From positions 146,409 through 210,408 of IMG/VR virus record IMGVR_UViG_3300046703_000335: a stretch of 64,000 nt of DNA; one strand, 5' to 3'. The first letter of the stretch is position 1. Every line of letters begins with the position of its first letter. The translations under genes were made by a program, and so were the position numbers. Under the pieces are notes generated by a model that was not told where the DNA came from, did no database searches, and was given only the letters and a program-made list of their open reading frames with translations. Below, piece after piece: positions 1,191 to 37,058 of this stretch.

Positions 1191-4124
1191 TTAAAGGCTC
1201 TGTCTCAGATTCAAAGTCACTACAATCCAATTCAAAGGAAATACTGGGCTGTAATATGCCTCTACATCAAGAGTACTAGGATCTTGTTGATTCTGAGTTA
1301 CGTTAATACCCGTAAAATCAACAATGAGCTCTTTTTGCTTCAGTGACTTAAAATATGACCCGACAGAATCTCTGACCTGAGACTGCATCTTTGGAAGATT
1401 CTTGGAACCAATGAATCTATCAAGAGATCTTCTAATACCCTGCTGAACAAAGTGCTTAACTTCTACTATTCTAGGATCTCTCGTTAAAGCTGTTGAAGTA
1501 TCAGATGTCAGATAGAAAAGAATCTTTATAACAGGAGCCTGTTCTTCAAGAACTGTACATCCAGCATTGGCAACAAGAGCTGCATTAACGCTATCCAATC
1601 TCCGATATAGTCTCTTAAATCCAACAATTGTAGAATTGGTTAAAGGAGTTGCTATATCAGAAACTTGAGATACATCTCGTCCAGCAACAGCAGCAGCTAT
1701 TATTGAACCATCAACGACATATTCCACTTCATTTCCATACGCATCCACGATACCTATAATCGCTCCATCAGGATAAATAGGAGTGAGTTTTTCAGTTTTA
1801 AGATTCTGGACCATTTGAATAACCTGGTCCGATGTCGTACCTACTGAAAAACCAAAGATACTCGTTCTCTCATTCTTATACCGTATACTTGACTGTATAG
1901 CATTTGAAGTCTTAAGATAACTGATAACTTCTGAATTAGTTGTCAAAGGTTGCATCAATGAAGGTCTCAAACCATTAGGTAAAGGTTCATTGAAAGCATC
2001 AATACCTGAGATGTAATCTGCAACAGAAGCATCCGTACCATTAGCACTACGTTTAATCTGCTTCAAGGCCACTGCCTGAGCACCATTTAAAAATGCTAAG
2101 TTAGCAGCTACAGTCAGTTTATTATTAATGTCCATAGGGCCATAATACTTTGTAACATCTCTCATGTTAGTCAAGAATCGTGTTGTATAATCTGTTTTTA
2201 CCTTATCAAAGGAAACATAATACAAATCACCAACTGCTGGCTCATTACCAGATTTTACATAAGTATCAATGATCACAGTGTCATCAGTATTATCAGGTGT
2301 TCCACCGCTTGTTGTAGGAACTGCTAAATTGACACCAGGGATTACTCTAACATTACTTACTGAAGCAGTAATGTAAAGTTTTTGTGTGGCATCTGACACG
2401 GTAGGATCACCTATATCATATCTTACTAAAGTACCCGCACCAGGATTAAAAGTTCCGGTATCACCAGAGAAAGTAATACGTAATCCTGTTGTAGGATCAA
2501 CATATGTCTTACCACAATAACCAATATTTTGATTATATGTAGTAACTGAACCAGTTCTTCCAGGAAGTGTGAATCCTGTACCAAGAAGTGAAGTAACTGT
2601 AAAAGCACCCGCACCATCAAAAGTAAATATTACACGTTCAACTGACCCTTTAAGAGGATCAATTTGAAAATTAGGGGTACCTGAACCAGAGTAAATTGGA
2701 GTAACTGTCCCACTGATATATTTAACTTCAAGTGCAGTACCACTTACTCTTGACGTTATAGTATACTTACCAATACCTGCACCACCAGGTACTTTATTGG
2801 TCATTGTCCACTTATCATCCAGAAGGAGATTTTCGAAGTATGTTACGAAAACTATTTCTTCAGTAGGTTGATCAGGAGACACCGTAAATGTAATCATATT
2901 GCCAGATATTTTTGAAACGGTTTTTGGTCCAGCTGTATAAGCTGCTGCCCAGTCAGTTCCAATATAAGCAATAATGTTTGCGGGATCTTCTGTCCATACA
3001 CCTAAACCTGATCCATCAACTGGCATCGTAGGAAGTGCAAAAGATTTATTACCTGCAAGATTGATCTGCTCTCCATTAGTATTAACTTGGATAACCCCAC
3101 CTACTGTATAAGGACTTGCTGGAGAAGCAACTCTTCCATATACACGTGTATCGGTAAGTGATACTGATACATTATTTATAAGAGGTACGGATCCTGCGGT
3201 AAACAAACCTTGAGCAGCATTGAAGGAATTTCCCCAATGAATTCTATTATTACCTGCAAGCACACAATCATCACCAATTGAGAAGTCATTAGTATCTTGA
3301 CTTAAACCAACCTTAACCAGTTGCTCAACAATTGATGCTGGAAGAATATCATATGTATCCTGCCAGGTATTTGTGAAGTAGGTAACAGTTAAAACTGATG
3401 AGACTGCAGGAGTATTTTGAAGTACAAACATTGCATCTGAACCATTAAGATGCGTAACCGGTACTTCTACACCGTTTACCTTAACTTGAAATACTCTTAC
3501 CTGACGTTCATACTCATCACCGATGATTAATGGGTCGGGGTTAAATAAGATAGTAGTCGTACCATTGATGTCGGAATCAACTGCTGATCTTCCACCATTA
3601 TCACCCTTTACAATACGATCACTTTTTACTTTGAAACTATTAGTAATACCATCTACTTGGACAGAAATGTCCTCATTTTCAATAAAGGTATCACGACGTT
3701 TGAAGTAGTAATTAGCTCTTACTTCATCACCCACTGCTGGGATCTGAACAAGAGTAACTTCACCAGTAAGACCATTTACAGAGTTAACTGCAACATTAAA
3801 TCCGTTAATTGAAACTATAACACTTCCAGGAGTAGTGGCTACTTTACCGCTACCATCACCAGTTACGATTGGTTTATTCTCGACTACAAATGTATTCTCC
3901 ATACCCGTGAATTGAGTACTGACATCTTCGTCAAGTATAAGATTATCAGAAATTGCTGATGAACCTCTTACCATTTCAAAGTTGCCAATACGAACAGTTT
4001 CAGCGGACACGCCCACAAAGGCTGGTATACGTATATCACCAGCTGCAGTAGTTCCAGCAGCTTCAGTGTTAGTTCTAGCGTATACACCTGGAAATACGAA
4101 ACTTTCTAAAGGTCCTATTGCCAT
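1191..4124 (-). CDS. Contractile tail sheath protein with large inserted beta/Ig-like domains
   Basis: N-terminal FPGVYART..IPAFVG; C-terminal sheath core (LAFLNGAQAV, AAAVAG..SDIATPLTN, YYSPVFPLNWIVVTLNL); 977 aa. Confidence 0.9.
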   Translation of the reverse strand: MAIGPLESFVFPGVYARTNTEAAGTTAAGDIRIPAFVGVSAETVRIGNFEMVRGSSAISDNLILDEDVSTQFTGMENTFVVENKPIVTGDGSGKVATTPGSVIVSINGFNVAVNSVNGLTGEVTLVQIPAVGDEVRANYYFKRRDTFIENEDISVQVDGITNSFKVKSDRIVKGDNGGRSAVDSDINGTTTILFNPDPLIIGDEYERQVRVFQVKVNGVEVPVTHLNGSDAMFVLQNTPAVSSVLTVTYFTNTWQDTYDILPASIVEQLVKVGLSQDTNDFSIGDDCVLAGNNRIHWGNSFNAAQGLFTAGSVPLINNVSVSLTDTRVYGRVASPASPYTVGGVIQVNTNGEQINLAGNKSFALPTMPVDGSGLGVWTEDPANIIAYIGTDWAAAYTAGPKTVSKISGNMITFTVSPDQPTEEIVFVTYFENLLLDDKWTMTNKVPGGAGIGKYTITSRVSGTALEVKYISGTVTPIYSGSGTPNFQIDPLKGSVERVIFTFDGAGAFTVTSLLGTGFTLPGRTGSVTTYNQNIGYCGKTYVDPTTGLRITFSGDTGTFNPGAGTLVRYDIGDPTVSDATQKLYITASVSNVRVIPGVNLAVPTTSGGTPDNTDDTVIIDTYVKSGNEPAVGDLYYVSFDKVKTDYTTRFLTNMRDVTKYYGPMDINNKLTVAANLAFLNGAQAVALKQIKRSANGTDASVADYISGIDAFNEPLPNGLRPSLMQPLTTNSEVISYLKTSNAIQSSIRYKNERTSIFGFSVGTTSDQVIQMVQNLKTEKLTPIYPDGAIIGIVDAYGNEVEYVVDGSIIAAAVAGRDVSQVSDIATPLTNSTIVGFKRLYRRLDSVNAALVANAGCTVLEEQAPVIKILFYLTSDTSTALTRDPRIVEVKHFVQQGIRRSLDRFIGSKNLPKMQSQVRDSVGSYFKSLKQKELIVDFTGINVTQNQQDPSTLDVEAYYSPVFPLNWIVVTLNLRQSL

Positions 4125-4263: not shown

Positions 4264-4743
4264 TCAACCTTCTGTAATTGCTCCAGATGATTCAAACTGT
4301 GGTATACCCTTTTTTACTCTATCTGATCTATGCTCCTGTAATGCTTCTGAATATTCTTTTCTTAACGTTCGTTCCTTATTATCTCCCAAGTGCATTATCG
4401 GACTATACTTACCATCCTGATCCTTGGGGATATTAACCTGCTCAGGAGTCTTACCCTTCCATCTCTTCTGCTGCCTAGCCTCATACCGGCTCTTCCATCT
4501 CTCATCGTAACCTTCCCATCTCTTTTCAGATACTTTACCTACGACTTTGTCAATCTCTTTACGAGTAACTATCGTATCTGTTTTAGGATTTAAGTCACTA
4601 TGCACCCCGAATAAAGAAGCCACTTTTCGTTCTGAAACCGTCCCACATCTTTTACAGGATTGCTCCGCATCCCTATCTTTATATGGCACTAATTCTTCAA
4701 ACTCATGACCACAGCCCACACACTTAAATTCATACAACGGCAT
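4264..4743 (-). CDS. FmdB-family zinc-ribbon protein
   Basis: MPLYEFKCVGCGHEFEEL...CKRCG signature. Confidence 0.75.
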   Translation of the reverse strand: MPLYEFKCVGCGHEFEELVPYKDRDAEQSCKRCGTVSERKVASLFGVHSDLNPKTDTIVTRKEIDKVVGKVSEKRWEGYDERWKSRYEARQQKRWKGKTPEQVNIPKDQDGKYSPIMHLGDNKERTLRKEYSEALQEHRSDRVKKGIPQFESSGAITEG

Positions 4744-4839: not shown

Positions 4840-6273
4840 CTAAAAATATCTAGGATAACCAATTTTGGGATAGGATACCTCAAAGATTGTGCTACTGGGC
4901 TTTAGCATCAATTCAAGTATTCTTCCCTGATTTGTTACGATATAACTCTTATTAGTTACATATCTGTAAATTTTAGTATCAAAATCTACAATCTCAGTCA
5001 GGAATGGAATAAACTTTTTCCATTCTGTCATAATCTGAATATTTATACCATGCCTATAGTATAAATCACCTGTATTCTCATCATATGGTTCCTCTGTTTC
5101 ACCCGTTGCATCCATCTCTTCAATAGTCAAACCTTCATCTATTAATAATAAACGGCGGTTTCCCCATATATCTTCTATTAGATGATCTGTAAGATTTGCC
5201 AGCTGCTGCGGGTCACGTGCCACTACATCAATATCAAAATTCATTTTATAGTGCCCACTATTCATATTTGCAGCAGCTTCCCGCTGAGGATATACAATAA
5301 CGACTACTTTATCTCCCACAGTTATTTCATTACTAAAAGAGAGAATCACCCCAGGAAGAGCCTCATTCACATAATGAAATTCACTGGGTATATTAAAAGG
5401 ACCCATAGTGCTGCCTACCCAGCGATAATTTGCATATAGGGTTGTATTAGCATCAAGAGGCTGTAAAAAAGTTATAAGACCATTTTGATCAATTGTATAG
5501 TCGATACCTTTTTCGAGATATAACTTAGTACTAACATCCATTTTTTTAGTGTAAAGCATATCAAAGTCACCATATAAATTTCCATTTAATAACTGTGCTG
5601 TAGGCTCCATACCTGTGGTTCTATCTATAACTTTTTCATTTTTAACAACATAAAATGGATCAATCACAAATTGCGTAGGAGATATTATCTCAATGTAATA
5701 CCTTCCCGGAGGAGTTAAATTACTATAATAATAAGACACTAAAAGCTGACTACCTAATACTGGGGCCATAGGCAAAGAAAACACACCACTGACACCATCT
5801 AAGAATTCTGGAAGTACTGATTGACCATCTAATAGAACCGAGATCTGCCGGAAATTATCAGCTACTAGCGTATTATTATACCCCGATAATACTGGCTTTC
5901 TTGGGATCTTAAAAAATCTATTAGTCCCTATAGATATTGTACCGGTTATTTGAGATGATAAATCTTCATCTTTTTGATATTTTGTCAAGTTATTAAAATC
6001 TTCCCAAACCCATGCTAAAAACTTTCCTTCAAAATTCTCTGCGTGAGCCATCATGACATGACTCTTCAATACCCCCGCGTGGTCATCAGCAGAGAGCTTT
6101 ATCCTTGATGATGAAGCATTCTTAAGTACGATCGCCATCATGGGTCTTTCTTTGTACGGGAATTTATGAAAAACCTCGACAGGAACTGATCTGAACACTT
6201 GATGTCTTTGTATAGAACCAGTAAGCTCATCCATGACCCGAGATTTAACAACTCTTAATAAATTATTTTCCAT
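4840..6273 (-). CDS. Probable tail completion/terminator-like structural protein with inserted beta domains
   Basis: 477 aa, upstream of sheath; shares a DEDLSSQITG..F....KP module with the sheath insertions; C-terminal MNFDIDVVARDPQQLANLTD resembles tail-terminator folds. Confidence 0.5.
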   Translation of the reverse strand: MENNLLRVVKSRVMDELTGSIQRHQVFRSVPVEVFHKFPYKERPMMAIVLKNASSSRIKLSADDHAGVLKSHVMMAHAENFEGKFLAWVWEDFNNLTKYQKDEDLSSQITGTISIGTNRFFKIPRKPVLSGYNNTLVADNFRQISVLLDGQSVLPEFLDGVSGVFSLPMAPVLGSQLLVSYYYSNLTPPGRYYIEIISPTQFVIDPFYVVKNEKVIDRTTGMEPTAQLLNGNLYGDFDMLYTKKMDVSTKLYLEKGIDYTIDQNGLITFLQPLDANTTLYANYRWVGSTMGPFNIPSEFHYVNEALPGVILSFSNEITVGDKVVVIVYPQREAAANMNSGHYKMNFDIDVVARDPQQLANLTDHLIEDIWGNRRLLLIDEGLTIEEMDATGETEEPYDENTGDLYYRHGINIQIMTEWKKFIPFLTEIVDFDTKIYRYVTNKSYIVTNQGRILELMLKPSSTIFEVSYPKIGYPRYF

Positions 6274-6277
6274 GCCA

Positions 6278-7636
6278 TCACCTATTCTTAATGTCTATTA
6301 TATCCAAATAAAGTTTTGATAATATATTGGGTAGTTCCGTATTTTGATTATAGCCTATTCGTATCAATGGTATTTTGTTTTCTTCACAAAACTTATTTTT
6401 AAGATTATCCCGATATTGCGACTTCTTGAAATTGGCGAGTGCTCTCTCCATAGATATGCCATTGAAACGGACTGGTCGGTAATGCTGTTCACCATCATAC
6501 TCAATTAATGTGTTTATTTCTGGGAGATAGAAATCAAACTGAAGCGGTTTTTTATCAACTTTTAATTCATTAAGCTTATACTGCTGAACAAAACTTATAC
6601 TATTTTCAGTAAACCATTTTTTTATTGCAAGTTCCCCATAAGATATATGGCAATTTGGGCACCTCTGCCCATCTATGTGATTATTTGGTTTCTGCCAGAA
6701 TTCACCATGCTCTCTACATATAATGCATACTTTAGTCCTCGAGTTATAATATTCAACTTTTGAATAATCGTAAATATCCCCATGTATTTCCTTAAATTTA
6801 TTAATACATTCAGATAAAGTATATGAAGCATACCCACATCTTTGACAACCATGCCCTTGTAAAAAAACATGTGCATTCTGATTAAACTCACCATGAATAT
6901 TACAAGTTACTATGACATCTGTAAGTGCATTTATATATCTTGTTTTATCATAGTTGTATTTATCTTTTCCGTATACTTTTATGGCCTTTTTAATAAATTT
7001 TTCCTGAGTCAGAGTACGTTTCTCACCAACTCTATCATACCCGCATTTAGGGCATCCACAACCACTTAAATGGTCGTTTGGGGTCTGATAGAATTTATTA
7101 TGCTTGGGACATATTATTAATAATTTAGAATGAGCATCAATGTACACAGATTTAGAATAATTGTACTTACTACCGTGAATAGAATTAGCTTTATCTACAA
7201 ATTCAGATAGGGTCTGTAGTTTTAGCTTTTTTAATAACTTATTAGCGCACTTTTTACAAATCCTACCCTTAAGATGTCCGTTAGGAGTCTGTAGGAAATC
7301 TCCATGTTCTGGGCAAGTTATTAGGACTTTAGAACCAATACCTGCATAGACAACTTTAGAATAATCATATCTATTACCATGAACTTTAATCGCTTTTTCA
7401 ACAAATTTATCTGTGGTGCAAGTATTAGACTTAGACCTGGACAAATTACCACATGTCGGGCACCCTTTTCCGGATATGTGACTTGAGGGCTTTTGACTAA
7501 AGATTCCATGTTCTGAGCATCTCATATCTATTTTTGTGCGCCAATCTTTATATTCAGATATGGAATAGTCATATCTGCTTCCATGCGTAGCCGTAGCTTT
7601 ATTAATAAATAATTGCGTTTGTTCTGATCTTTCCAT
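6278..7636 (-). CDS. Free-standing homing endonuclease: repeated Zn modules plus C-terminal PD-(D/E)XK (DUF559/Vsr-like) nuclease
   Basis: About five repeats of F..KA..HG..YDYS...Y....K..I.C..HG.F.Q.P..H..G.GCP.C; C-terminal FDFYLPEINTLIEYDGEQHY. Confidence 0.8.
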   Translation of the reverse strand: MERSEQTQLFINKATATHGSRYDYSISEYKDWRTKIDMRCSEHGIFSQKPSSHISGKGCPTCGNLSRSKSNTCTTDKFVEKAIKVHGNRYDYSKVVYAGIGSKVLITCPEHGDFLQTPNGHLKGRICKKCANKLLKKLKLQTLSEFVDKANSIHGSKYNYSKSVYIDAHSKLLIICPKHNKFYQTPNDHLSGCGCPKCGYDRVGEKRTLTQEKFIKKAIKVYGKDKYNYDKTRYINALTDVIVTCNIHGEFNQNAHVFLQGHGCQRCGYASYTLSECINKFKEIHGDIYDYSKVEYYNSRTKVCIICREHGEFWQKPNNHIDGQRCPNCHISYGELAIKKWFTENSISFVQQYKLNELKVDKKPLQFDFYLPEINTLIEYDGEQHYRPVRFNGISMERALANFKKSQYRDNLKNKFCEENKIPLIRIGYNQNTELPNILSKLYLDIIDIKNR

Positions 7637-7662
7637 AAGATATCCTCGACTATAATAAATCT

Positions 7663-7677
7663 ATTAAGGGATTATTA
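7663..7677 (-). promoter_or_regulatory. Putative late promoter motif copy
   Basis: ATTAAGGGATTATTA (1 mismatch), 27 nt upstream of ATG 7636, abutting a terminator. Confidence 0.6.
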
Positions 7678-7710
7678 AAAAAGGCTGAGAGAAGTTATTC
7701 TCCCAGCCCC
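7677..7710 (-). terminator. Rho-independent terminator after actin-like gene
   Basis: Minus strand GGCTGGGAGAA-TAAC-TTCTCTCAGCC followed by TTTTTT. Confidence 0.75.
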
Positions 7711-7758
7711 TTGCAGAAAGCTGTTCTTTCGCAAACAGCTAATTGATCAATATCTTAC

Positions 7759-8769
7759 TTAATCATTCATTGCAGCTATAAGAAGTCCTTTTGCTACATC
7801 TCCAAGAGGATCACTAGCCATTCTTATTTCAGATATGCTAATAGGAAAATTATCACGTTCTTTTTCGAACTCTTGTTTGAAAAATTCAAGGAAATTTTTG
7901 GCTTTAGCAGTACCACCACTAATAATCCATGGGATCTGGTCAGGAAGTTCAATCTTTCCATTATCCTTTTTGAACTCTCTCTTTATGCTATCTACCACAT
8001 AATGTATAAGATTCTTATAATAAACCACAATGGCTTCTCTTTCCCTAAGTTGTTTTGGATCACCTTCATTAGGATCAAGAAGATTTACACCTTTTTCCTT
8101 TATCGACATCAGACGTGTAGCAGTACTACCTACAGCTTTAGCTGCAGATTGATCAACCCAGTCACCACTACGTGAAACTGAAAATGACATACCCACCATG
8201 GTCTGGAAAACCAAAGCTGTATTTACCATACCTGCACCAAAAGATGAAGCAAGAGCTGTAAAACCATCAGAACTTCCATTTGCATAAACAATTGCAGCTG
8301 CTTCATTCATAGCAGTAGCTTTATAACCAAAAGACTCTATAATCTTTTGGAACATTGCTTGATGATAGATAATGTCCATATCTTTATCTATAGACTTCGC
8401 TGGTACAGAAAAGAATACTGACTCATTCTCAACTTTAGGAGAACTAAGAATATTTTTTAAAAGTATTACTAACATCCTCTCAGCATCATGTTCTCCAGAG
8501 GATATAACTCCCTGATTTAAAGGTCTTCTAGCTTCTCTTTTAAGAAGATTAGATACACTTAATGCAGGTTCTCCTACTATGTAAATAAAATCTTTTTCCT
8601 GCACGTAAGAAACATTTGACATCTTAAGCATATTCAAAATAGACTGGTCTGCTTCTACATCCAAAAATGCGTCCCGGATAGATTTTAGTTCTACAGGTGC
8701 ATTTTCATTTTTAATATCTTTTGTAGCACTTACCAAAAAACATGTCCCTATGTCAAGTCCAACTGCCAT
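7759..8769 (-). CDS. Actin-like ATPase (MreB/FtsA/Alp superfamily)
   Basis: Phosphate-1 GLDIGTCFL, FSVPA, connect-1 MNEAAA, phosphate-2 SFGAGMVN, RSGDWVD, adenosine IISGGTAK, C-terminal VAKGLLIAA; 336 aa. Confidence 0.85.
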   Translation of the reverse strand: MAVGLDIGTCFLVSATKDIKNENAPVELKSIRDAFLDVEADQSILNMLKMSNVSYVQEKDFIYIVGEPALSVSNLLKREARRPLNQGVISSGEHDAERMLVILLKNILSSPKVENESVFFSVPAKSIDKDMDIIYHQAMFQKIIESFGYKATAMNEAAAIVYANGSSDGFTALASSFGAGMVNTALVFQTMVGMSFSVSRSGDWVDQSAAKAVGSTATRLMSIKEKGVNLLDPNEGDPKQLREREAIVVYYKNLIHYVVDSIKREFKKDNGKIELPDQIPWIISGGTAKAKNFLEFFKQEFEKERDNFPISISEIRMASDPLGDVAKGLLIAAMND

Positions 8770-8783
8770 AAAAACCTCCTAAA

Positions 8784-9464
8784 TTATATTGATTTAGATT
8801 TCAACTCTTTAAGTTTTTTCAATGAATCAGACACGCTATCTCCAGAATCAATTGTCCGTACTTCTAACTTTATGTGTGAATTAGCATCTTCTACCCGAAT
8901 ATTAGGGATATAAACATCTTCTACCCGTCGACTATCTCCTTGTATAGATGCTGAATTCACACCAGATCGACTAATAATACCTTCAAGTTTTTCAAGTATA
9001 CCATCACTTTTATTACTCTGCATCCGTACTTCTATACTCTTTAAAGCATCTTGTATAACCGATAAATCAATAGAAGTAGGATTTTTTTCTAATTTCTCAA
9101 GTCTATCTAATATAATAGCCAAAGCATCATTATTCTGCGTTGAAGGAAGAGAAAGATTAGATTGATTTTTAACTGTTGCTTCTAAATCTTTAATCTTATC
9201 TAATAAGACTTCTATTTCTGGAGATGAGACTGATTCAGAAGATTTAATCTCAGAGGATATAATAGGTGTTTGAATATCAAAAGAACCTGTGGTATCTTCA
9301 GACTTTTTGAGAACTATAAGAATCTTACGTTCGATTGCGCGTTTTAAATCAACAGAACTTTCATATTGAGCATCAGTATAAACTTTCTGCTGCTTATAAT
9401 ACACACAATCGTTAAGATCTTTAAGTTCTACCTTCTTTGGGGAATTTCCAATGATATAGAACAT
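8784..9464 (-). CDS. Coiled-coil protein, possible partner of the actin-like ATPase
   Basis: 226 aa with repeated heptad segments (LLDKIKDLE, ILDRLEKLE, ILEKLEGII); directly upstream of the actin-like gene. Confidence 0.6.
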   Translation of the reverse strand: MFYIIGNSPKKVELKDLNDCVYYKQQKVYTDAQYESSVDLKRAIERKILIVLKKSEDTTGSFDIQTPIISSEIKSSESVSSPEIEVLLDKIKDLEATVKNQSNLSLPSTQNNDALAIILDRLEKLEKNPTSIDLSVIQDALKSIEVRMQSNKSDGILEKLEGIISRSGVNSASIQGDSRRVEDVYIPNIRVEDANSHIKLEVRTIDSGDSVSDSLKKLKELKSKSI

Positions 9465-9509
9465 ATTTTTTATTTTATATAAATTTTATGAAATTAAAAT
9501 ATCCAGCTA

Positions 9510-10388
9510 TTAAATGGAATATTTTACAACCGATTTCCAGAAATCATCTTGAGCTTCTTTTGGAATTTTTTCAAATTTAGGAACATTTTTTTTCGGGATT
9601 TCTACGCCTTTTTCATCTATTGGTTCTTCTTCCTCAGAGGTTCCCTCTTCTATAGATTCACCATCTATTACAGGCTCATCCTCAGGGACTGTCTCTTCTA
9701 CGACTGGCTCACCTTCAACAGCACCTTGATCCTCAGGTATTTCTTCATCCTTTGGAGCTACACCATCCTCAGGAGTTTCATCTCCCATTGGAGTTTCAGC
9801 TATTTCAGGTGTCTCATCCTTATCCGAAGTTGCATCACCTTCAGGTTTCTGTTCTTCATCAGGAGTTCCATCATAATCTGATATTTCAGGTGTTTCATCA
9901 GTTTTATCTTCATCAGAAGTTTCTTCATTTTCAGAAGTTTCAGAAACATCTTTATCTTCTTCAGGGTTCACTGCAGTCATGGGAAGAGTGCCATCAATAA
10001 CAGGGGGTTCATCAGTTTTAGGTTCGACTACATCAGAAGTCTCATCCCCCTTATCAGTTCCCTGATCATCAACAGGTTCGAATATATCCGCACCAGTATC
10101 TTCTGTATCATCAGACTCTACATAGTATTTTTCACTTGAGTCTGTAGGAACATAAGACATTTTACCACCACAAGCCAGACATGTTACGGCATCATTCACT
10201 GTAACATTAGCGATACGTTTAACACTATGATTTTTACCAGCAATCTTACGCTTTTTATTAATATCAAGTAATGACGATGTATGATTACATCCATCACAAA
10301 CAAAGAATGTATTATCCGCAGCTTCCTTCTCAAGATCATCAGCGATCTTAAGTAATCTTTCAGCGGCAAGTTTCATATTCGATCCCAT
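9510..10388 (-). CDS. Zinc-finger protein with long acidic tail, probable head-internal protein
   Basis: CDGC..CLACG; Asp/Glu-rich tail; N-terminal LLKIADDLEKEAA tag; ATG 10388 has an AGGAG RBS (track start is 10409). Confidence 0.6.
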   Translation of the reverse strand: MGSNMKLAAERLLKIADDLEKEAADNTFFVCDGCNHTSSLLDINKKRKIAGKNHSVKRIANVTVNDAVTCLACGGKMSYVPTDSSEKYYVESDDTEDTGADIFEPVDDQGTDKGDETSDVVEPKTDEPPVIDGTLPMTAVNPEEDKDVSETSENEETSDEDKTDETPEISDYDGTPDEEQKPEGDATSDKDETPEIAETPMGDETPEDGVAPKDEEIPEDQGAVEGEPVVEETVPEDEPVIDGESIEEGTSEEEEPIDEKGVEIPKKNVPKFEKIPKEAQDDFWKSVVKYSI

Positions 10389-10437
10389 GAAAAGACTCCT
10401 TTGAGGCAAAAGAACTTCTGATAGATTTATATATAAA

Positions 10438-10452
10438 ATTAAGAGATTATTA
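10438..10452 (-). promoter_or_regulatory. Putative late promoter motif, perfect copy
   Basis: ATTAAGAGATTATTA (coding strand TAATAATCTCTTAAT). Confidence 0.7.
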
Positions 10453-10507
10453 TAACAAAAGATTTCTTATAGAATAAAATTCTTAAAAGGAACTAAAAAT
10501 AAAAAGT

Positions 10508-11887
10508 TCAAAAAACAATATTCTCAAATGTTACTGTTCTCCCCTGTAAAGTATATTGACCTGGTATCCCTGGCTTGTTAGGGATAGTAGGACTTGCATC
10601 TGTAGGTCTATCTGTACGATAAGCATTCCACGCTGCGGGGACAATCAATCCTCCATTTATAGGTACCTGATACCTGATATCTCTCCGATCAAGGGGCGCT
10701 AACATAAAATGCTGCTGATATATAGCTCCACGAGATCCTTGTGGATTCACATGAGCTATGGACATCCTATCATTATTCTGTCTTACGATAAAATCACGAT
10801 CATTAAGAAGAGGATAAGGACCAGTCCAGGTTTGCCAATCGTAAGATATATGTAAACCCATATCCATAAGTTGGACAGTCTTTTCTGTTTCTGGGGGAGC
10901 TATAATTATATCATAAGGCCCTTCATACCCCCCAATATAACCTGTACCTAGGCATAAGGTATGATCACTTTGAGGAGTACGATATTGCTCATTCCAACAA
11001 GGGCAACGCTCTCCAGCCCATTTCCTAATGAATAACTTTACACGTTCTCCAGCCTGCTCTAATATCCATCTGTTTCGTCGAATACTTTCAGCCCAAATCC
11101 AATCAATCTTTTCCATATCATAAAGATTAATAGCGCCTACTTCAGTTAAGGGGGTCTCTTTCATTTCGTCATTAGACCCATCGATAGCAACTGTAGTACA
11201 TTTATAATAAATTTTTCTATTAGCATCCAACTGAATGTTATTATTGATATAGGTATAGGATACCCTTATCTCACCACCACTACTAAGAATGGGTAATACA
11301 GGAGGATCTAATCTATTAAACTGATTATTGTATGTTTGTTTATTTATTAAAAAGATTTCACCGGTTTCGCCTCTTACCTTAAATGCAGGAACTGTTTGAA
11401 ATGCATCCAAGGAAGTGGGCCTAATCTCAACCTTAACATGCTTAGGATGATTCGCCAATTCTCCATTTGTTCCGACAATTACTAATGGTTTATTATAGGT
11501 ATGAACAATCCAATCACCATTTGCATTAGTACCTGCTATAAGTCTTCCACCAGCTACAGGATCTTCCTGATTAGCCCAAACTTCCCGGGTTTCATCCCTA
11601 TAATACAAAGCCCCTATAGGTACATCATTTAACTTAATATAGGGTCCTTCAGGAGTATCATATGATCGATAGACATTTATACCAAGAACATTATACCCAT
11701 TATGCTCAGAATATTCTGCAGTAGAATCCCATCGGATGTCTATCGCTCCTATAAGATAAGGGCTGGTAGCATGTACATTCTTAGGTCCGAGAGGTATAGA
11801 AAGAGGCTTATCCGTATTCCATCGATAAGGAAGTTTAAAATCTGGTCTTCCATAATTATCCATAAAATTATGAGGAGATGTTGTCAT
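10508..11887 (-). CDS. Probable neck/head-closure protein with Fn3-like N-terminal region
   Basis: IRWD..GINVYRS (Fn3-like); GERVKLFIRKWAGERCPCW..CLGTGYIGGY; WTGPYPLLNDRDFIV; head-tail region context. Confidence 0.55.
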   Translation of the reverse strand: MTTSPHNFMDNYGRPDFKLPYRWNTDKPLSIPLGPKNVHATSPYLIGAIDIRWDSTAEYSEHNGYNVLGINVYRSYDTPEGPYIKLNDVPIGALYYRDETREVWANQEDPVAGGRLIAGTNANGDWIVHTYNKPLVIVGTNGELANHPKHVKVEIRPTSLDAFQTVPAFKVRGETGEIFLINKQTYNNQFNRLDPPVLPILSSGGEIRVSYTYINNNIQLDANRKIYYKCTTVAIDGSNDEMKETPLTEVGAINLYDMEKIDWIWAESIRRNRWILEQAGERVKLFIRKWAGERCPCWNEQYRTPQSDHTLCLGTGYIGGYEGPYDIIIAPPETEKTVQLMDMGLHISYDWQTWTGPYPLLNDRDFIVRQNNDRMSIAHVNPQGSRGAIYQQHFMLAPLDRRDIRYQVPINGGLIVPAAWNAYRTDRPTDASPTIPNKPGIPGQYTLQGRTVTFENIVF

Positions 11888-16286: not shown

Positions 16287-18422
16287 ATGACAGCAGCACA
16301 AAAAGGTATTACTTTGCTTTTATGGTCTGAACAAGAAGATACACTACTCAAGGAGCTATATTTAAAAACACCTAAAGATATAATATTAACTAAGTTAAAC
16401 AGAACTTGGAAATCTATAAGATATAGGGCTAGTAGACTAAAGTTTAAACGAGACCCATCCATTATAAAACAGGATAATATAGAAGGTACTAAAAAAGCTA
16501 TGCTTGAAAAATATGGTGTAGAATACTCTACCCTTCTACCGGCTATGAAAGAAAAAAGTAGACAAACCAATTTGAAAAAAAGGGGAGTAGAGTATCCTTC
16601 ACAATCCAAAGAAGTTCGTGACAAGATAAAATTAGTAGTAAATGAGAGATATGGTGTAGATAATGTATTTCAGGCACAGAAAATAAAAGAAAAATCTGAA
16701 CAAACTATTTTAAAAAGATATGGAGTAAGATATATAAACCAAAGTCCAACTATTCGAGAGAAAACAAAAGAAACAAATCTTGAAAGATATGGAATATCAA
16801 ATACTTTTCAATTAACAGATAGGGTCGAAAAAGGAATGATTGAAAAGTATGGACAAAGAGTCCCACTTAATGTCCCTGAAATTGCTGAAAAAAAGAAAAA
16901 AACGAGTTTAGAAAAATATGGTGTTGAAGTAGCTTCAAAAAATGAAGCTGTAAAAAGAAAATTATCAGAAACTTTAAAAACTGCTGTCGTTAGAGAAAAA
17001 AAATATCAAGCATTAAAGAAAAAAGGCTCTTTTAATTATTCTAATGAAGAGCTTGCATTCGCTAATTATTTATTAATAGCTGATCCAGACCTTAAAACTC
17101 ATCAGCTTCATCCTATAACAAAACATGTGATAGATTACTATATGCCCAGATATGACTTATGGGTACAATATGACGGAACTTATTGGCACGGTAAGGGAGA
17201 AGCAGTGCATACTGGACCTCAAGCCATATCCATAGAGAAGATAAAAGCAAAAGATATCTATCAGAACGAAAATATTCCAAATTTAATAAGATTCTGGTCA
17301 GATGATGTTAATGAAGCTATAAAAAAAGGCAGCATATTTACTCTTATTGAAATAAAAATAAAAGAAAAGATAAATACTACTGAGGATATATTTGTGTGCC
17401 ACCAGTATCGAAAAAAAATAGAACATTATACTGAAGACCGAGACAATTTACCATTTAACCCAGATAATATCAAAGCATCAAATTTTACGCTTATAAAGGA
17501 GGAACTATCAACAGAGATCGTAGAGTTTATAAAAAAATATGAATGGTTAGAAACTGTTGGAGTTAATCCTAAATGGTGTTTCACAGCTCGATACAATGAT
17601 AAACTTGGAGGAGTAGTCCTAATAAATGAACCTACTGCTTATTCAAAAATGCTGGGTAAAGATACCCCCATCTATGAAGCCCTTATACAAAGAGGTGCTA
17701 CAGCTTCCTGGACCCCTAAAAACCTCGGAAGCAGACTTGTTATGTTCTCTTGTAAGTGGATGGTAGCTAATACCCCAAAACGAATCTTTGTAGGTTATGC
17801 TGATCCTTCTGCTAAAGAACGCGGCATTATCTATCAAGCATGTAATTTTGATTATTTAGGGGATAATTTTGGGAATAGCTACCTATACAAGCACCCTGAA
17901 ATAAATCGAACATTTACATCCCAATATCTAAAAAGAACATCAACATTTAGACGCTGGTGTCTTCTTAATAAAATTGAACTGAGAAAAGAATGGTTTAAAG
18001 AAAATGGGTTTAAGAATTTGGAGATTATACCTCATGAAATTAAAAATATGTGGTATCTCTGGATAAAAGATATAATAAGCAGTGCAGAAAGAATAACTAT
18101 AAGTAAAAAGATGAAATATGCTATTCTACTCTATAGAGATAAAAAAGACAGAAAAATACTTGAACCTTTAAAAAAATATGACAAATTTCCATACAATAAA
18201 ATTTATAACACAACAAACCAGCTAACTCTCCGACCACGCGGAAAAAACAATCATGGCTTAACAGCAGATAGAAAAAATCCAGAAAAAATTGAATTTATAT
18301 TAAAAAATCATAGCACTATGTCCAGGTCAGTTATGGCCCTAGAGTTGAATGAAACTCAACGATGGGTAAAAAGACAAGTAAATAAATTAGTATCTGAGAA
18401 TAAGATTAAGCCAAAGAGATAA
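16287..18422 (+). CDS. Fusion: KYGV-repeat DNA-binding region + PD-(D/E)XK (Vsr/DUF559-like) endonuclease + Mom-like GNAT DNA-modification domain + C-terminal HTH
   Basis: Repeats (E/K)(K/R)YGV...; IDYYMPRYDLWVQYDGTYWHG; FIKKYEWL..RGATASWTPKNLGSRLV..GYADPSAKERGIIYQACNFDYLG; opposite strand to neighbours. Confidence 0.7.
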   Translation: MTAAQKGITLLLWSEQEDTLLKELYLKTPKDIILTKLNRTWKSIRYRASRLKFKRDPSIIKQDNIEGTKKAMLEKYGVEYSTLLPAMKEKSRQTNLKKRGVEYPSQSKEVRDKIKLVVNERYGVDNVFQAQKIKEKSEQTILKRYGVRYINQSPTIREKTKETNLERYGISNTFQLTDRVEKGMIEKYGQRVPLNVPEIAEKKKKTSLEKYGVEVASKNEAVKRKLSETLKTAVVREKKYQALKKKGSFNYSNEELAFANYLLIADPDLKTHQLHPITKHVIDYYMPRYDLWVQYDGTYWHGKGEAVHTGPQAISIEKIKAKDIYQNENIPNLIRFWSDDVNEAIKKGSIFTLIEIKIKEKINTTEDIFVCHQYRKKIEHYTEDRDNLPFNPDNIKASNFTLIKEELSTEIVEFIKKYEWLETVGVNPKWCFTARYNDKLGGVVLINEPTAYSKMLGKDTPIYEALIQRGATASWTPKNLGSRLVMFSCKWMVANTPKRIFVGYADPSAKERGIIYQACNFDYLGDNFGNSYLYKHPEINRTFTSQYLKRTSTFRRWCLLNKIELRKEWFKENGFKNLEIIPHEIKNMWYLWIKDIISSAERITISKKMKYAILLYRDKKDRKILEPLKKYDKFPYNKIYNTTNQLTLRPRGKNNHGLTADRKNPEKIEFILKNHSTMSRSVMALELNETQRWVKRQVNKLVSENKIKPKR

Positions 18423-34475: not shown

Positions 34476-37058
34476 TTACATAAACTCTTTTAAGAATCTT
34501 CCATGATCAGCAGCAATAGGAGCTACTTTGAAAAGTTCTTCTTTTAGCGAAGCATATTTCTTACCAGCATTAAACAATCGCTTCATCTTAAGAGTATAAT
34601 TATTTCCTCGAATCTTCCCATACTCATAGAAGGACAGAGCTTTATTCTGTGCGAGGCATTCTTTAAAATACTCTGACACTATTATAGTAGGAGTCTCAGC
34701 CTGATATTGTGGTATCATCCCACAGGCTTCTATAAACTTATTCCAACTACCATAATAGTGCTCAATAACATGTGAGGGTGCCCCCAAAATTGATTTTTCA
34801 CGATAGGTCTCTCGAGACATCCCTAATTTTAAGCTAACTTCTTTAAACTTATTCTGGATTGTATTCTCGTCAAAAGATACCGAAAAAGCTCTTTTATTTA
34901 CTTCATGTGGAGCATCAGTGCACTTTATAATATTATCATAACTGTTTTTTAAGTTAACCCAGTTAATCGAGTCCTTAACATGTCTGGAAAACAACAAGAT
35001 AACTTCATAACTGTCTGAGGTAGTCACATGCTTAAAAGGTATTCTCAACACTTTAAATAACTTATACCCTAAATTACTACATGTGTTTATTGATCTTTCA
35101 ATAAGGGGAACTTTTTGGTTGGGGCTATAACAGACACCGAATACTCCATCCTCCCTCAAGGATTTAATACAACCTTTTACAGTAGCATCCCAATACTGAG
35201 TCAACCAATCGGAAAGTTCTGGAAATCTATTGATACTTTGAGATTCTTCATTAGAATAGCTTTCATAATCAAAGTATGGTGGTGATGAAAATGCTAATCC
35301 AAAATAATTCGTGTAAGGGATATCAACTTCAGAGCCCTTATTGTGTACACAATAATTTCCCCCTAAGTTAGCTTTTACAAATGCTCCGAAATTTAATAGA
35401 TTTTCATATGTTATAGTATTAGGCTCAAAACCTACATACTCCATACCTAAAGACATTGCTGCCAGCATCCTTGAACCAAAACCAGCAGAATAATCTAATA
35501 CCTTACCATTTTTACAAAAGTTGGCATATATATACCTAGCTATTGAGGGCTTAAAGTTACTTACAACAGTATTCATTAACTTTAGCCCTTTACGCATTGA
35601 AGAATCATTTATTCTATCTGCGTACCTCAACCTATTCTCTACTAACTTTTTAAAAAAAGTCTCATCAACCCATACATCTATAGGTGCTGGATAACCTTTA
35701 CGTTTACTGCTATATATATTCGGAAAAAACTTCTCGCATAATTCCATCCCAGAGGTGTTAAAGCTTAAGAGATCGCCATCACATGTTGAAATCCCGTTGT
35801 CTTTAAAGCTCCTTAACAAATAAAGAGCCCTACTGTCTGATATGTCTGAAAATGGAAAAGGTTTCCCCCAATATTGCTCAAAAGTCATATTAAACATCCG
35901 GGCCTTCATAACATCATTACCTACCCTATAAAATTTAGGATGTACCATTAATGGGGTTAAGGTATTAACCTTATCGGGGATTAAGAACTCTTCAGGTATC
36001 TTATATAGGACATCCGGAGTGGCTACTTGATATACAATATCAAAAAATTCCTTATAAAATTTTTTAGAAAAACTTATCCCACTTTTATAAAGCTGAAAAC
36101 CCCACCCCAACTTATTCTCTAAAAAATCAACAAAAGCACTTAGTTGTTCCTTTATAGGGCAATAATTATTAATTATAAGAAATCGAGAATCATCATCGTA
36201 ATAACCATCATCTATAAACCAATAGGCCAATATTCTTTCATCCCAGTACTCTGAAATTAAGTCTATTGGAATTAGCTTACCTTCAACACCCTCTTTATAA
36301 AAAGATTCTCTAAACTTTGAGAAATGTTCACTCTGAATTGTTGCAAAACGTAACCCTGTTCCGTTATCACAGGGGTAGCAATTAGTGGAATAAGGTTCTA
36401 AAAGTTTATGTTTTAAACGAAGGTACTGCTCTTGTTTTAATGAGTGACTCTCATAATATCTTGGAGAAGAATCTATTCCACCATCCCCAAGTAGACCACC
36501 AATAATTAAGACAATCTGATTATGTGTTAAAGGAGGAGACTGCTTCTGTGTTTTTAATAAAATCCCTTTATCTTGTATTATAGGTCTCCAAGTAGTTTTT
36601 GAAACACCATATTTAGAAGAAAATTCTTCTTGTGTTAATTCATAATAATCTTTTTCAAGAACTTCTTTTGGAGTCTGTATGACTCTTTCTTTTTGTATAT
36701 CATTAACTTTTATAGATATCCCAAGATTCAATTTCTTCCTTCTATATGCTACACCCTCTCCAGACATCTTAAAAAGTTTGCCAATATTTGAATCTGTTTT
36801 TCCTTCAGCGTGCAAGGTTCTCAAGATATCATCAGTGAGTTTATTCTTAAGATCTTTTCGTATACCCTCATACACCACAGTAATTTTCGAGTTATATGCC
36901 CCTCTACTATCCGAAGTAATACCATAGGTTTTCATTCGCTTAAAGATTGCATCTTCTGAGACACCAAAAATTCCACCTATAGCTTTTGCAGTAAAACCAA
37001 AATCGCAATATAGCCTTTTTATGGATTCCATATTTAATTCTTCGATAGTATACTGCAT
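34476..37058 (-). CDS. Fusion: HTH repeats + LAGLIDADG endonuclease + amino (N4C/N6A) DNA methyltransferase + homing-endonuclease-associated repeat
   Basis: IIGGLLGDGGI and LAYWFIDDGYY; MTase motif I LDYSAGFGSR and motif IV FSSPPYFDYE; PSHVIEHYYGSWNKFIEACG; 860 aa. Confidence 0.8.
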   Translation of the reverse strand: MQYTIEELNMESIKRLYCDFGFTAKAIGGIFGVSEDAIFKRMKTYGITSDSRGAYNSKITVVYEGIRKDLKNKLTDDILRTLHAEGKTDSNIGKLFKMSGEGVAYRRKKLNLGISIKVNDIQKERVIQTPKEVLEKDYYELTQEEFSSKYGVSKTTWRPIIQDKGILLKTQKQSPPLTHNQIVLIIGGLLGDGGIDSSPRYYESHSLKQEQYLRLKHKLLEPYSTNCYPCDNGTGLRFATIQSEHFSKFRESFYKEGVEGKLIPIDLISEYWDERILAYWFIDDGYYDDDSRFLIINNYCPIKEQLSAFVDFLENKLGWGFQLYKSGISFSKKFYKEFFDIVYQVATPDVLYKIPEEFLIPDKVNTLTPLMVHPKFYRVGNDVMKARMFNMTFEQYWGKPFPFSDISDSRALYLLRSFKDNGISTCDGDLLSFNTSGMELCEKFFPNIYSSKRKGYPAPIDVWVDETFFKKLVENRLRYADRINDSSMRKGLKLMNTVVSNFKPSIARYIYANFCKNGKVLDYSAGFGSRMLAAMSLGMEYVGFEPNTITYENLLNFGAFVKANLGGNYCVHNKGSEVDIPYTNYFGLAFSSPPYFDYESYSNEESQSINRFPELSDWLTQYWDATVKGCIKSLREDGVFGVCYSPNQKVPLIERSINTCSNLGYKLFKVLRIPFKHVTTSDSYEVILLFSRHVKDSINWVNLKNSYDNIIKCTDAPHEVNKRAFSVSFDENTIQNKFKEVSLKLGMSRETYREKSILGAPSHVIEHYYGSWNKFIEACGMIPQYQAETPTIIVSEYFKECLAQNKALSFYEYGKIRGNNYTLKMKRLFNAGKKYASLKEELFKVAPIAADHGRFLKEFM

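What the first reader, a model, noticed from the sequence alone, without database searches (positions are those of the whole stretch)
7759..10452. Actin-like ATPase in a three-gene late operon inside the tail/neck cluster
Seen: promoter motif (10438), then Zn-finger/acidic protein, coiled-coil protein, actin-fold ATPase and terminator (7677). Known: phage cytoskeletal proteins are mostly tubulins (PhuZ, TubZ); actin-likes are rare (AlpC with adaptor AlpA in prophage CGP3) and usually tied to DNA segregation. Inference: late expression among virion genes suggests a filament or chaperone for positioning or assembling particles, with the coiled-coil protein as adaptor.
Basis: partly seen in the sequence, partly recalled or inferred. 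Interest (0 to 1): 0.68.

Follow-up and report, generated by a model that had tools for sequence, protein, structure and literature searches.

The report
Huge-phage actin with its adaptor
A large lineage of huge phages carries, next to its tail genes, its own actin-like protein and a partner predicted to dock on it; the same partner motif sits beside this actin family's genes outside these phages, so it looks like a two-part cytoskeleton that phages took over, perhaps to organise virus assembly.

Summary
On the minus strand, a conserved upstream motif (10438-10452) precedes three genes. They encode a Zn-ribbon/acidic protein (9510-10388), a 226-aa helical protein (8784-9464) and an actin-fold protein (7759-8769). 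A hairpin plus U-run terminator follows (7677-7712).

The actin-fold protein is a full-length member of Pfam Volactin (E 1.4e-61). Its model best matches the filament formers MamK, MreB, BeeR and actin.

It is not a recent host capture. At least 375 IMG/VR contigs (up to 619 kb) encode it. 78 phage-context sequences form one clade, in a fixed gene order three genes upstream of the tail sheath. It is the most conserved gene of that block.

The constant unit is the pair of 226-aa protein and actin, not the trio. The pair is present in 76 of 78 testable loci. The Zn-ribbon gene is limited to one sub-clade.

A controlled complex prediction places the partner's conserved C-terminal strand and helix on the actin (0.66; best control 0.15). 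The same C-terminal motif ends the gene directly upstream of Volactin genes in Magnetococcales chromosomes, where it is membrane-anchored, and on archaeon-labelled contigs.

I read this as a filament-plus-adaptor module retargeted by phages. Polymerisation, timing and cargo are inferred. I found no published description.

The parts
10438..10452 (-). Conserved upstream motif TAATAATCTCTTAAT; a candidate phage promoter element for the unit.
   Evidence: Exact match; 14 sites in the window against 1.23 expected. 15 of 16 sites in the 210-kb record lie on the gene strand. Conserved in the same position in at least 18 related loci.
9510..10388 (-). Gene 1 (292 aa). N-terminal helix, then a CxxC...CxxC zinc ribbon, then a long acidic D/E/T/P-rich linker with degenerate 6-aa repeats, then a short conserved C-terminus. 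Specific to one sub-clade.
   Evidence: No Pfam or PHROG family.
8784..9464 (-). Gene 2 (226 aa), the putative adaptor. Confident 55-aa N-terminal globular domain, variable helical middle, and a conserved C-terminal strand plus helix (residues about 185-225) with the YIP...L motif.
   Evidence: Alignment A3. AlphaFold2 model. Docking on the actin scores 0.66 against a best control of 0.15. The motif is shared with partners outside these phages.
7759..8769 (-). Gene 3 (336 aa), a Volactin-family actin-like protein. D6-x-G8-T9, E156, D203 and G285-G286 are conserved. The second phosphate loop reads S176-x-G-x-G, as in the whole family sampled.
7677..7740 (-). Two hairpins after the actin stop codon. 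The second (7679-7712) runs into a U-tract, giving an intrinsic terminator.
   Evidence: sequence. (fold, -30.8 kcal/mol, z -3.5).
7663..7677 (-). One-mismatch copy of the upstream motif, which starts the next unit.
6278..7636 (-). HNH homing endonuclease. A sporadic insertion between the actin gene and the next conserved gene; not part of the system.
   Evidence: phrog_559, E 1.6e-96. Absent from most related loci.
10508..11887 (-). Conserved upstream flank (459 aa), probably a virion protein.
   Evidence: Weak PHROG 'virion structural protein' hits. Syntenic in most loci.
4840..6273 (-). Conserved downstream flank (477 aa). Shares a short domain with the sheath protein.
4264..4743 (-). Conserved 159-aa zinc-ribbon protein between the 477-aa gene and the sheath gene.
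   Evidence: PF09723, E 1.2e-12. Synteny.
1191..4124 (-). Tail sheath (977 aa). Anchors the block as a tail module.
   Evidence: phrog_2839, E 2.9e-26.

Best explanation
The unit encodes a phage-borne, two-component actin system of the Volactin family.

The 336-aa protein is an actin-fold nucleotide-binding protein. It most likely polymerises, as its characterised relative in Haloferax volcanii does.

The 226-aa protein is its adaptor. Its conserved C-terminal strand adds to the actin's first beta-sheet (actin residues 25-31). Its terminal amphipathic helix sits in the cleft formed by residues 162-170 and the C-terminal helix 319-335, the place where ParR docks on ParM. Its helical middle would act as spacer or oligomeriser. 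Its 55-aa N-terminal domain would hold a cargo.

In Magnetococcales the same C-terminal motif is attached to a membrane anchor and to a FimV-type protein. The phage lineage replaced this with a soluble domain.

The pair sits between conserved virion genes three genes upstream of the sheath gene, and carries the same upstream motif as other genes of the structural region. I therefore infer that it is made together with virion parts and serves to place or bring together large virion components (or the assembly site) in the infected cell.

Shown here: family, fold, conservation, synteny and the shared motif. Predicted: binding. Inferred: polymerisation, timing and cargo.
For: Family and fold:
- Pfam Volactin E 1.4e-61 over the full length. 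Model pLDDT 90.3.
- Top structural matches are filament-forming actins; no Hsp70 or kinase appears in the top 50.
- MamK is the only PDB hit by sequence profile, E 4e-7.
- Volactin forms dynamic filaments in vivo, attached to the membrane by their tips (PMC10869688).

Distribution and inheritance:
- 375 IMG/VR contigs encode a relative.
- 78 phage-context sequences form one clade, SH-aLRT 96.
- The order 459-aa gene, variable gene, adaptor, actin, 477-aa gene, 159-aa gene, sheath holds down to 46% actin identity.
- All 25 loci anchored independently on the 477-aa gene, and with enough upstream sequence, carry the actin gene.
- The actin is more conserved than the sheath in every locus, for example 78% against 61% and 60% against 43%.
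- One relative carries an intein in the second phosphate loop.

Adaptor:
- Present in 71 of 81 loci by HMM, plus 5 by motif.
- Complex prediction 0.66 against a best control of 0.15. That mark was reached by 58 of 80 solved complexes and 2 of 110 mismatched pairs (roughly, as my own alignments were used). Partner pLDDT at least 56; the runs agree in at least 63% of contacts.
- The same motif ends the upstream gene in Magnetococcales and in archaeon-labelled loci. hhalign gives P 0.0028 and 0.0003. A post-hoc pattern finds it in none of 2329 other ORFs.
- The contacted C-terminal helix of the actin is nearly invariant.

Regulation: motif and terminator.
Against: - No experiment or expression data.
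- Polymerisation is not tested for any phage member.
- The family has Ser where other actins have the first Asp of the second phosphate loop. ATP turnover may therefore differ.
- The adaptor's N-terminal domain has no significant fold match, so the cargo is unknown.
- Gene position in a structural block does not prove a role in assembly.
- The docking site overlaps what is a longitudinal contact in other actin filaments. The partner could therefore cap or sequester subunits rather than tether a filament.
- The complex score is a model's confidence, not a measurement.
Confidence: 0.5

Rival explanations
1. It is a ParMRC-like segregation system for phage DNA. The actin filament would push or position replicated phage genomes, or a plasmid-like carrier state. 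The 226-aa protein would be the ParR-like link to DNA.
For: Salactin aids DNA partitioning (PMC10869688). The predicted docking of a C-terminal helix in the cleft resembles ParR on ParM (the ParR comparison is from my own knowledge).
Against: - No centromere-like repeat array lies in or beside the unit. The only repeats are in-frame ones in the acidic linker.
- The adaptor's N-domain gave no match to a DNA-binding fold.
- The non-phage partners carry membrane or FimV-type heads, not DNA-binding ones.
- The unit is fixed inside the tail-gene block.
Confidence: 0.13
2. It is a non-polymerising actin-fold ATPase that acts as a chaperone or assembly platform for tail or neck proteins, in the manner of Hsp70 nucleotide-binding domains or PilM. 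The 226-aa protein would be its co-factor or client.
For: The fold is shared with Hsp70 and PilM-type proteins (my own knowledge). The gene lies among tail genes. The unusual Ser in the second phosphate loop could mean altered ATPase behaviour. A short partner peptide bound to an actin fold also occurs in non-filament systems such as PilM-PilN (my own knowledge).
Against: The best structural and sequence matches are filament formers, and no Hsp70 appears in the top 50. There is no substrate-binding domain. The one studied family member forms filaments. Conservation above that of the sheath fits a polymer with many contacts.
Confidence: 0.12
3. It is a virion component. The actin-fold protein, with its partner, would be built into the particle (tail appendage, neck or internal structure) rather than acting in the cytoplasm.
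For: It sits between conserved structural genes, shares their upstream motif, and is conserved like a core structural gene.
Against: To my knowledge no actin-fold protein is known in a phage particle. The conserved nucleotide-binding residues argue for an enzyme or dynamic polymer. Homologous pairs outside these phages have nothing to do with particles.
Confidence: 0.1
4. It is a host-takeover factor. The phage filament would reshape or enlarge the host cell, or reorganise its envelope, to make room for very large particles.
For: Volactin affects cell shape in Haloferax volcanii. Non-phage partners tie the filament to the membrane or to FimV-type pole proteins.
Against: The phage adaptor has lost the membrane anchor. 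The unit is grouped with virion genes rather than with early genes.
Confidence: 0.1

Closest known systems
Volactin (VolA, HVO_2015) of Haloferax volcanii; Pfam PF25216
   Same: Same Pfam family, matched over its full length at 209 bits. Same four-subdomain actin fold. The family pattern S-x-G-x-G in the second phosphate loop is shared with every non-phage member I sampled. Volactin filaments touch the membrane by their tips, and its authors expect unknown binding factors. This fits an end-binding adaptor.
   Different: This copy is encoded by huge phages within a tail-gene block, not by a cell. The adaptor has a soluble head instead of a membrane anchor. I could not obtain the Haloferax sequence or its neighbours, so the Ser and the upstream partner are unverified for VolA itself.
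MamK with MamJ (magnetosome chain)
   Same: MamK is the closest solved structure by fold (5ljv, E 3e-14, TM 0.70). It is the only PDB hit by sequence profile (E 4e-7). An acidic, repetitive partner gene nearby recalls MamJ; that is an analogy from my own knowledge.
   Different: Only 16% identity. The MamK-like genes of a Magnetococcales genome are distant outgroups in the tree. No homology of either partner to MamJ was tested or seen.
ParM-ParR-parC plasmid partition
   Same: An actin-like protein with an adjacent adaptor gene. The adaptor's C-terminal helix is predicted in the cleft between the two halves of the actin.
   Different: No ParM family match. No centromere repeats. The adaptor gene lies upstream, and its head is not a recognised DNA-binding fold.
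AlpC-AlpA of prophage CGP3, and Alp-type phage or plasmid actins
   Same: A virus-encoded actin-like protein with an adaptor.
   Different: A different actin family. Those systems act on DNA and lie near replication or lysogeny genes. This one is a core gene of a tail module in lytic-looking huge phages.
PhuZ/TubZ phage tubulins
   Same: A phage-encoded cytoskeletal polymer thought to organise the infected cell of a very large phage.
   Different: Tubulin fold, not actin fold. No tubulin gene is present in the 210-kb record, which is only about 45% of the genome.
BeeR bacterial actin filament (8r2n)
   Same: Highest TM-score among the structural matches (0.73).
   Different: 17% identity. No sequence-profile hit.

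Membership tests
Volactin (PF25216) | Match to the family model above its curated cut-off, over the full length | tested here: met
   209.2 bits against a cut-off of 35; positions 1-321 of 321; E 1.4e-61. Repeated on the whole record.
Volactin (PF25216) | Four-subdomain actin fold with nucleotide-binding motifs (D-x-G-T, catalytic Glu, G-G adenosine loop) | tested here: met
   Model pLDDT 90.3. Matches to MamK, MreB and actin. D6, G8, T9, E156, D203, G285 and G286 are invariant in 28 sequences.
Volactin (PF25216) | Family-specific second phosphate loop S-x-G-x-G, shared with non-phage members | tested here: met
   S176, G178 and G180 are invariant, including in Magnetococcales, Omnitrophota and Planctomycetota members. 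Not checked in the Haloferax protein itself.
Volactin (PF25216) | Forms dynamic filaments | not testable with these tools
   Shown only for Haloferax volcanii (PMC10869688).
MreB/Mbl (PF06723) | Match above the curated cut-off | tested here: not met
   19.6 bits against a cut-off of 27. MreB genes are distant outgroups.
ParMRC type II partition system | Centromere-like repeat array next to the operon | tested here: not met
   No intergenic repeat array in 7600-10600.
ParMRC type II partition system | Adaptor docks by a C-terminal helix in the cleft of the actin-like protein | tested here: inconclusive
   Predicted only: 0.66 against a best control of 0.15.
Two-gene Volactin module (proposed here) | The gene directly upstream ends in an acidic stretch, then [YF][IFM]P, about 20-35 residues, then an amphipathic helix with a conserved Leu | tested here: met
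   Phage: alignment A3, with P187 nearly invariant and L218 invariant. Magnetococcales, Neomarinimicrobiota-, Thermoplasmatales- and Heimdall-labelled loci. hhalign P 0.0028 and 0.0003. No hit among 2329 other ORFs (the pattern was made after seeing the sequences).
Hsp70 nucleotide-binding domain | Closest fold or sequence match, and an attached substrate-binding domain | tested here: not met
   No Hsp70 family in the Pfam scan. None among the top 50 fold matches. The protein is 336 aa and has only the actin fold.

The most novel reading that the evidence does not exclude
A whole lineage of huge phages (genomes up to about 620 kb) may depend on its own actin cytoskeleton, a filament plus an end-binding adaptor, as a core part of virion morphogenesis, moving or placing very large virion parts. 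The adaptor's C-terminal motif would then also identify the so far unknown Volactin-binding factors of archaea and bacteria, with interchangeable heads (membrane anchor, FimV-type protein, phage cargo domain).
Probability: 0.3. Interest if true: 0.85.

Novelty: new variant of a known kind. Interest (0 to 1): 0.72.

Why it matters
Phage cytoskeletons are known mainly from tubulins of nucleus-forming jumbo phages, and from a few actin-likes tied to DNA segregation.

This case differs in four ways:
- The actin homologue is a vertically inherited core gene of hundreds of huge-phage genomes.
- It is more conserved than the tail sheath.
- It is fixed inside the tail-gene block.
- It is paired with a dedicated partner.

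If it forms filaments that organise assembly, it would show a second, independent way in which very large phages solve the problem of moving large parts through a crowded cell.

The shared partner motif also gives a direct, testable candidate for the 'volactin-binding factors' that the Haloferax study left open. It suggests that this actin family works as a filament with swappable adaptors.

Both proteins are small and soluble, so binding and polymerisation can be tested without culturing the phage.

Tried and rejected
Searches that found nothing useful:
- PHROGs found no family for any of the three proteins.
- phmmer of the actin-like protein against PDB sequences found nothing useful. Only a profile reached MamK.
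- The sigma-70/terminator consensus scan gave promoter counts at chance level and missed the real hairpin. T4-type late-promoter strings were not informative.
- No tubulin gene in the 210-kb record, which is incomplete.
- No Rfam family in 7500-10700.
- The protein-atlas search with the 226-aa protein returned only its own viral cluster.
- Pfam and PHROGs gave no identity for several other motif-preceded genes, so I could not assign the motif to a temporal class.

The adaptor's N-terminal domain:
- Foldseek and VIA searches gave no significant match. The best were B. subtilis YqbF (probability 0.93, E 0.2) and Z below 5.
- I do not claim a fold for it.

Technical failures:
- A 33-sequence alignment of the 477-aa protein was too divergent for a locus scan. 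A 14-sequence one worked.

A failed route to Haloferax: a search from the archaeon-labelled actin, meant to reach Haloferax volactin, listed only Heimdall-labelled and unnamed proteins among its best 120 hits. The neighbours of HVO_2015 therefore remain unchecked.

Rejected readings:
- Recent capture of host MreB or FtsA.
- A conserved three-gene operon across the lineage.
- 'Archaeal' or 'bacterial' origin for the MAG contigs L007-L010, which carry phage gene order.

No other genetic code was used.
Full report
**What the window is.** The window is the last 64 kb of a 210,408-bp IMG/VR virus record. CheckV rates the record 45% complete, which suggests a genome of roughly 450 kb. Almost all genes run on the minus strand. 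PHROGs identify several virion genes:
- a tail sheath at 1191-4124;
- a portal at 46404-49829;
- a prohead-protease domain at 41137-43989.

Several homing endonucleases and glycosyltransferases are also present. The finding therefore lies in the virion-gene region of a huge tailed phage.

**The observation.** Three ORFs follow one another on the minus strand.
- Gene 1 is listed from a TTG at 10409. An ATG at 10388 sits 7 nt after AAGGAG and is the likelier start, giving 292 aa.
- Gene 2 (8784-9464) encodes 226 aa.
- Gene 3 (7759-8769) encodes 336 aa. It starts 14 nt after gene 2 and has an AGGAGG ribosome-binding site.

Upstream of gene 1 lies TAATAATCTCTTAAT (10438-10452).
- The motif occurs 14 times in the window with up to two mismatches, against 1.23 expected. 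13 of these are on the gene strand, and those I placed against the ORFs lie between genes.
- In the whole record there are 16 sites with up to one mismatch, 15 on that strand. A reversed control pattern gives one.
- In at least 18 related phage loci a copy sits in the gap just upstream of the gene-1 homologue, under 120 nt before the called start. In six loci another copy follows the actin gene.

This makes it a real, conserved regulatory element that brackets the unit. Its timing is unknown.

After the stop of gene 3 come two hairpins. The second (7679-7712) runs into a U-tract ending at 7677. Folding energy is -30.8 kcal/mol, z -3.5. A one-mismatch motif copy follows at 7663-7677. There is no Rfam family in the region.

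**The actin-like protein.**
- Family: Pfam gives Volactin (PF25216) at E 1.4e-61, 209 bits, covering the whole model. MreB reaches only 19.6 bits, below its cut-off.
- Fold: an AlphaFold2 model from 28 sequences has mean pLDDT 90.3. Foldseek against the PDB puts the MamK filament first (5ljv, E 3e-14, TM 0.70). MreB, the BeeR filament (TM 0.73), actin and crenactin follow. No Hsp70 or sugar kinase is among the top 50.
- Sequence profile: only MamK is reached, at E 4e-7.
- Conserved residues: D6-x-G8-T9, E156, D203 and G285-G286 are invariant. The second phosphate loop reads S176-x-G-x-G in all 28 sequences, including Magnetococcales, Omnitrophota- and Planctomycetota-labelled members. This is a family trait, not a phage defect.
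- Function known for the family: the only studied member, Haloferax volcanii volactin, forms dynamic filaments. They span the cytoplasm, touch the membrane by their tips and influence cell shape. Its authors expected unknown binding factors (PMC10869688).

**Distribution and descent.**
- A protein search found 481 relatives. The best 120 share 63-99% identity, and many lie on contigs of 100-470 kb.
- In IMG/VR, 375 contigs encode a relative, including records of 416-619 kb.
- Among deposited phage genomes only two uncultured huge phages match: LR745208.1 at 46% and LR756511.1 at 31%. No cultured phage carries the gene.
- In one genome per prokaryote species, the closest hits (47-74%) are short MAG contigs that carry the phage gene order (L007-L010). 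The next group is Magnetococcales at 34-35%.
- One Magnetococcales gene lies on a 2.29-Mb contig among housekeeping genes and is itself Volactin at E 2.9e-71.

I built a maximum-likelihood tree of 98 sequences (IQ-TREE quick search; SH-aLRT support only).
- 78 phage-context sequences form one clade (support 96).
- Their sister clade holds Magnetococcales plus two other contigs (support 97).
- MreB and MamK-like genes are far outside.
- The 595-kb phage LR756511.1 falls outside on a long branch.

So this is an old phage gene, not a recent capture.

**Gene order.** Across 80 IMG/VR loci the order is the 459-aa gene, a variable gene, the adaptor, the actin, the 477-aa gene, the 159-aa Zn-ribbon gene, the sheath, then a 320-aa gene. 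This order holds down to 46% actin identity.
- HNH endonuclease genes, like the one at 6278-7636 here, are sporadic insertions.
- Loci found independently through the 477-aa protein carry the actin gene in all 25 cases that have enough upstream sequence.
- The actin is the most conserved gene of the block in every comparison. Examples are 90% against 80% for the sheath, 78% against 61%, and 60% against 43%.
- In one relative (L120) the gene carries a 364-aa LAGLIDADG intein between S176 and G178, with Cys...His-Asn|Cys junctions. Inteins favour conserved, functionally critical sites.

**The partner.** The 226-aa protein has three parts:
- a conserved N-terminal 55 residues, modelled as a small alpha/beta domain at pLDDT about 97;
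- a variable helical middle;
- a conserved C-terminus, P-x-Y-I-P-x-I, about 20 residues, then an amphipathic helix with an invariant Leu.

By HMM it lies directly upstream of the actin in 71 of 81 phage loci, and five more are recognised by the motif. Three loci end at a contig edge and two are unclear.

The Zn-ribbon/acidic protein (pI 4.05) is confined to the window's sub-clade. The other sub-clade has an unrelated basic protein of 170-215 aa in that position.

**Predicted binding.** A complex prediction with controls scored 0.66 (three runs: 0.66, 0.66, 0.69) against a best control of 0.15.
- That mark was reached by 58 of 80 solved complexes and by 2 of 110 mismatched pairs. These counts hold only roughly, because my own alignments were used.
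- Partner pLDDT is at least 56. The runs agree in at least 63% of contacts.
- The interface is the partner's residues 189-225. A strand pairs with actin strand 25-31. The last helix lies against actin residues 162-170 and the C-terminal helix 319-335.
- Those actin residues are nearly invariant.
- From my own knowledge, this is the cleft between the two halves of the actin fold that ParR uses on ParM.

The result supports binding; it does not show it.

**The same motif outside these phages.** The gene directly upstream of the Magnetococcales Volactin gene encodes a 135-154-aa protein. It has N-terminal membrane helices, a coiled-coil stretch, an acidic run, and the ending ...ERYIPAYGAG...SVEDVARKLASMQR. 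The preceding FimV_N protein of 530-700 aa ends in a similar ...PFIPSIH...NRLNAL.

Contigs labelled Neomarinimicrobiota, Thermoplasmatales and Heimdallarchaeota also have an upstream gene with this ending. Statistical support comes from two tests:
- Profile-profile comparison aligns the C-terminal 45-47 columns in register, at P 0.0028 and P 0.0003.
- A pattern written after seeing these sequences hits 15 of 2344 other ORFs. All 15 are the upstream neighbours of non-phage actin genes.

A caution applies to the 'archaeal' branch of 1140 proteins. Its contigs hold several HNH/NUMOD3 endonucleases, NUDIX and glycosyltransferase genes, and one is 223 kb. It may itself be viral. Only Magnetococcales and Haloferax volcanii (control hit) are safely cellular in my sample.

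**Interpretation.** The data fit an ancestral two-gene module: an actin-like filament plus an adaptor with a constant actin-binding tail and an exchangeable head. The huge-phage lineage holds this module with a soluble head, fixed among tail genes and under the same motif as other genes of the structural region.

- I think the likeliest function is a phage filament system that places or joins large virion parts, or marks the assembly site.
- The docking site may overlap a filament contact. The partner could therefore act at filament ends (as ParR does), or cap or sequester subunits.
- Rivals are DNA segregation, a non-polymerising chaperone or platform, a particle component, and host reshaping. 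Against DNA segregation: there are no centromere-like repeats, and no DNA-binding fold was found.
- None of these rivals is excluded.

**Literature.** Searches for volactin, for actin-like proteins in huge, jumbo or mega-phages, and checks of the main reviews and surveys found no description of this gene. The library does not hold every journal.

**Limits.**
- No expression data were available.
- The tree is a quick search with one support measure.
- Reference sequences for ParM, Alp, FtsA, salactin and Haloferax volactin could not be fetched, so they are not in the tree.
- The host is unknown.

Noticed in passing
L120:2746-4875 (IMGVR_UViG_3300028837_003833): The actin-like gene of a relative (about 86% identical to the window's) carries a 364-aa intein with a LAGLIDADG domain. 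It is inserted between S176 and G178 of the second phosphate loop, with junctions ...ALASS|CLTPG...SLHN|CGAGM.
   Followed up: yes
L020:3449-5571 and the other Magnetococcales loci L015-L027: Two genes lie upstream of the chromosomal Volactin gene: a FimV_N protein and a small membrane/coiled-coil protein. Both end in the same C-terminal motif as the phage adaptor. This suggests several adaptors for one filament.
   Followed up: partly
L144, L146 (JGI and ENA contigs; one of 223 kb): The large 'Heimdall/Thermoplasmatales' Volactin branch (1140 proteins) lies on contigs rich in HNH/NUMOD3 endonucleases, NUDIX and glycosyltransferase genes. It may be viral rather than archaeal.
   Followed up: partly
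window 56112-59360: This 1082-aa protein contains an intein (Intein_splicing plus a LAGLIDADG domain). Further homing endonucleases lie at 6278-7636, 16287-18422 and 34476-37058. The genome is heavily colonised by selfish elements.
   Followed up: no
window 10508-11887, 4840-6273 and 1191-4124: The 459-aa protein, the 477-aa protein and the tail sheath share a short homologous domain. Their HMMs hit one another.
   Followed up: no
L068 and L073 (IMGVR_UViG_3300025141_000016, 297 kb): One contig carries two different actin-adaptor loci about 150 kb apart. This is either a duplication or a chimeric assembly of two related phages.
   Followed up: no
L063, L066, L072, L079, L093 and others, directly upstream of the adaptor gene: In the second phage sub-clade the Zn-ribbon gene's place is taken by a conserved basic protein of 170-215 aa. 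It has motifs such as RGVYGKPL and TAPLTTDKAWIHPGIAKHTF. Its function is unknown.
   Followed up: no
window 9729-9944: The acidic linker of the Zn-ribbon protein is built of degenerate in-frame 18-nt (6-aa) repeats. Homologues range from about 116 to 355 aa, mostly by length change in this linker.
   Followed up: partly
L007-L010 (MAGs labelled Altiarchaeales, KSB1, Legionellales, uncultured bacterium): These MAG contigs carry the phage gene order around the actin gene. They are most likely mis-binned phage contigs, so they give no clue to the host.
   Followed up: partly
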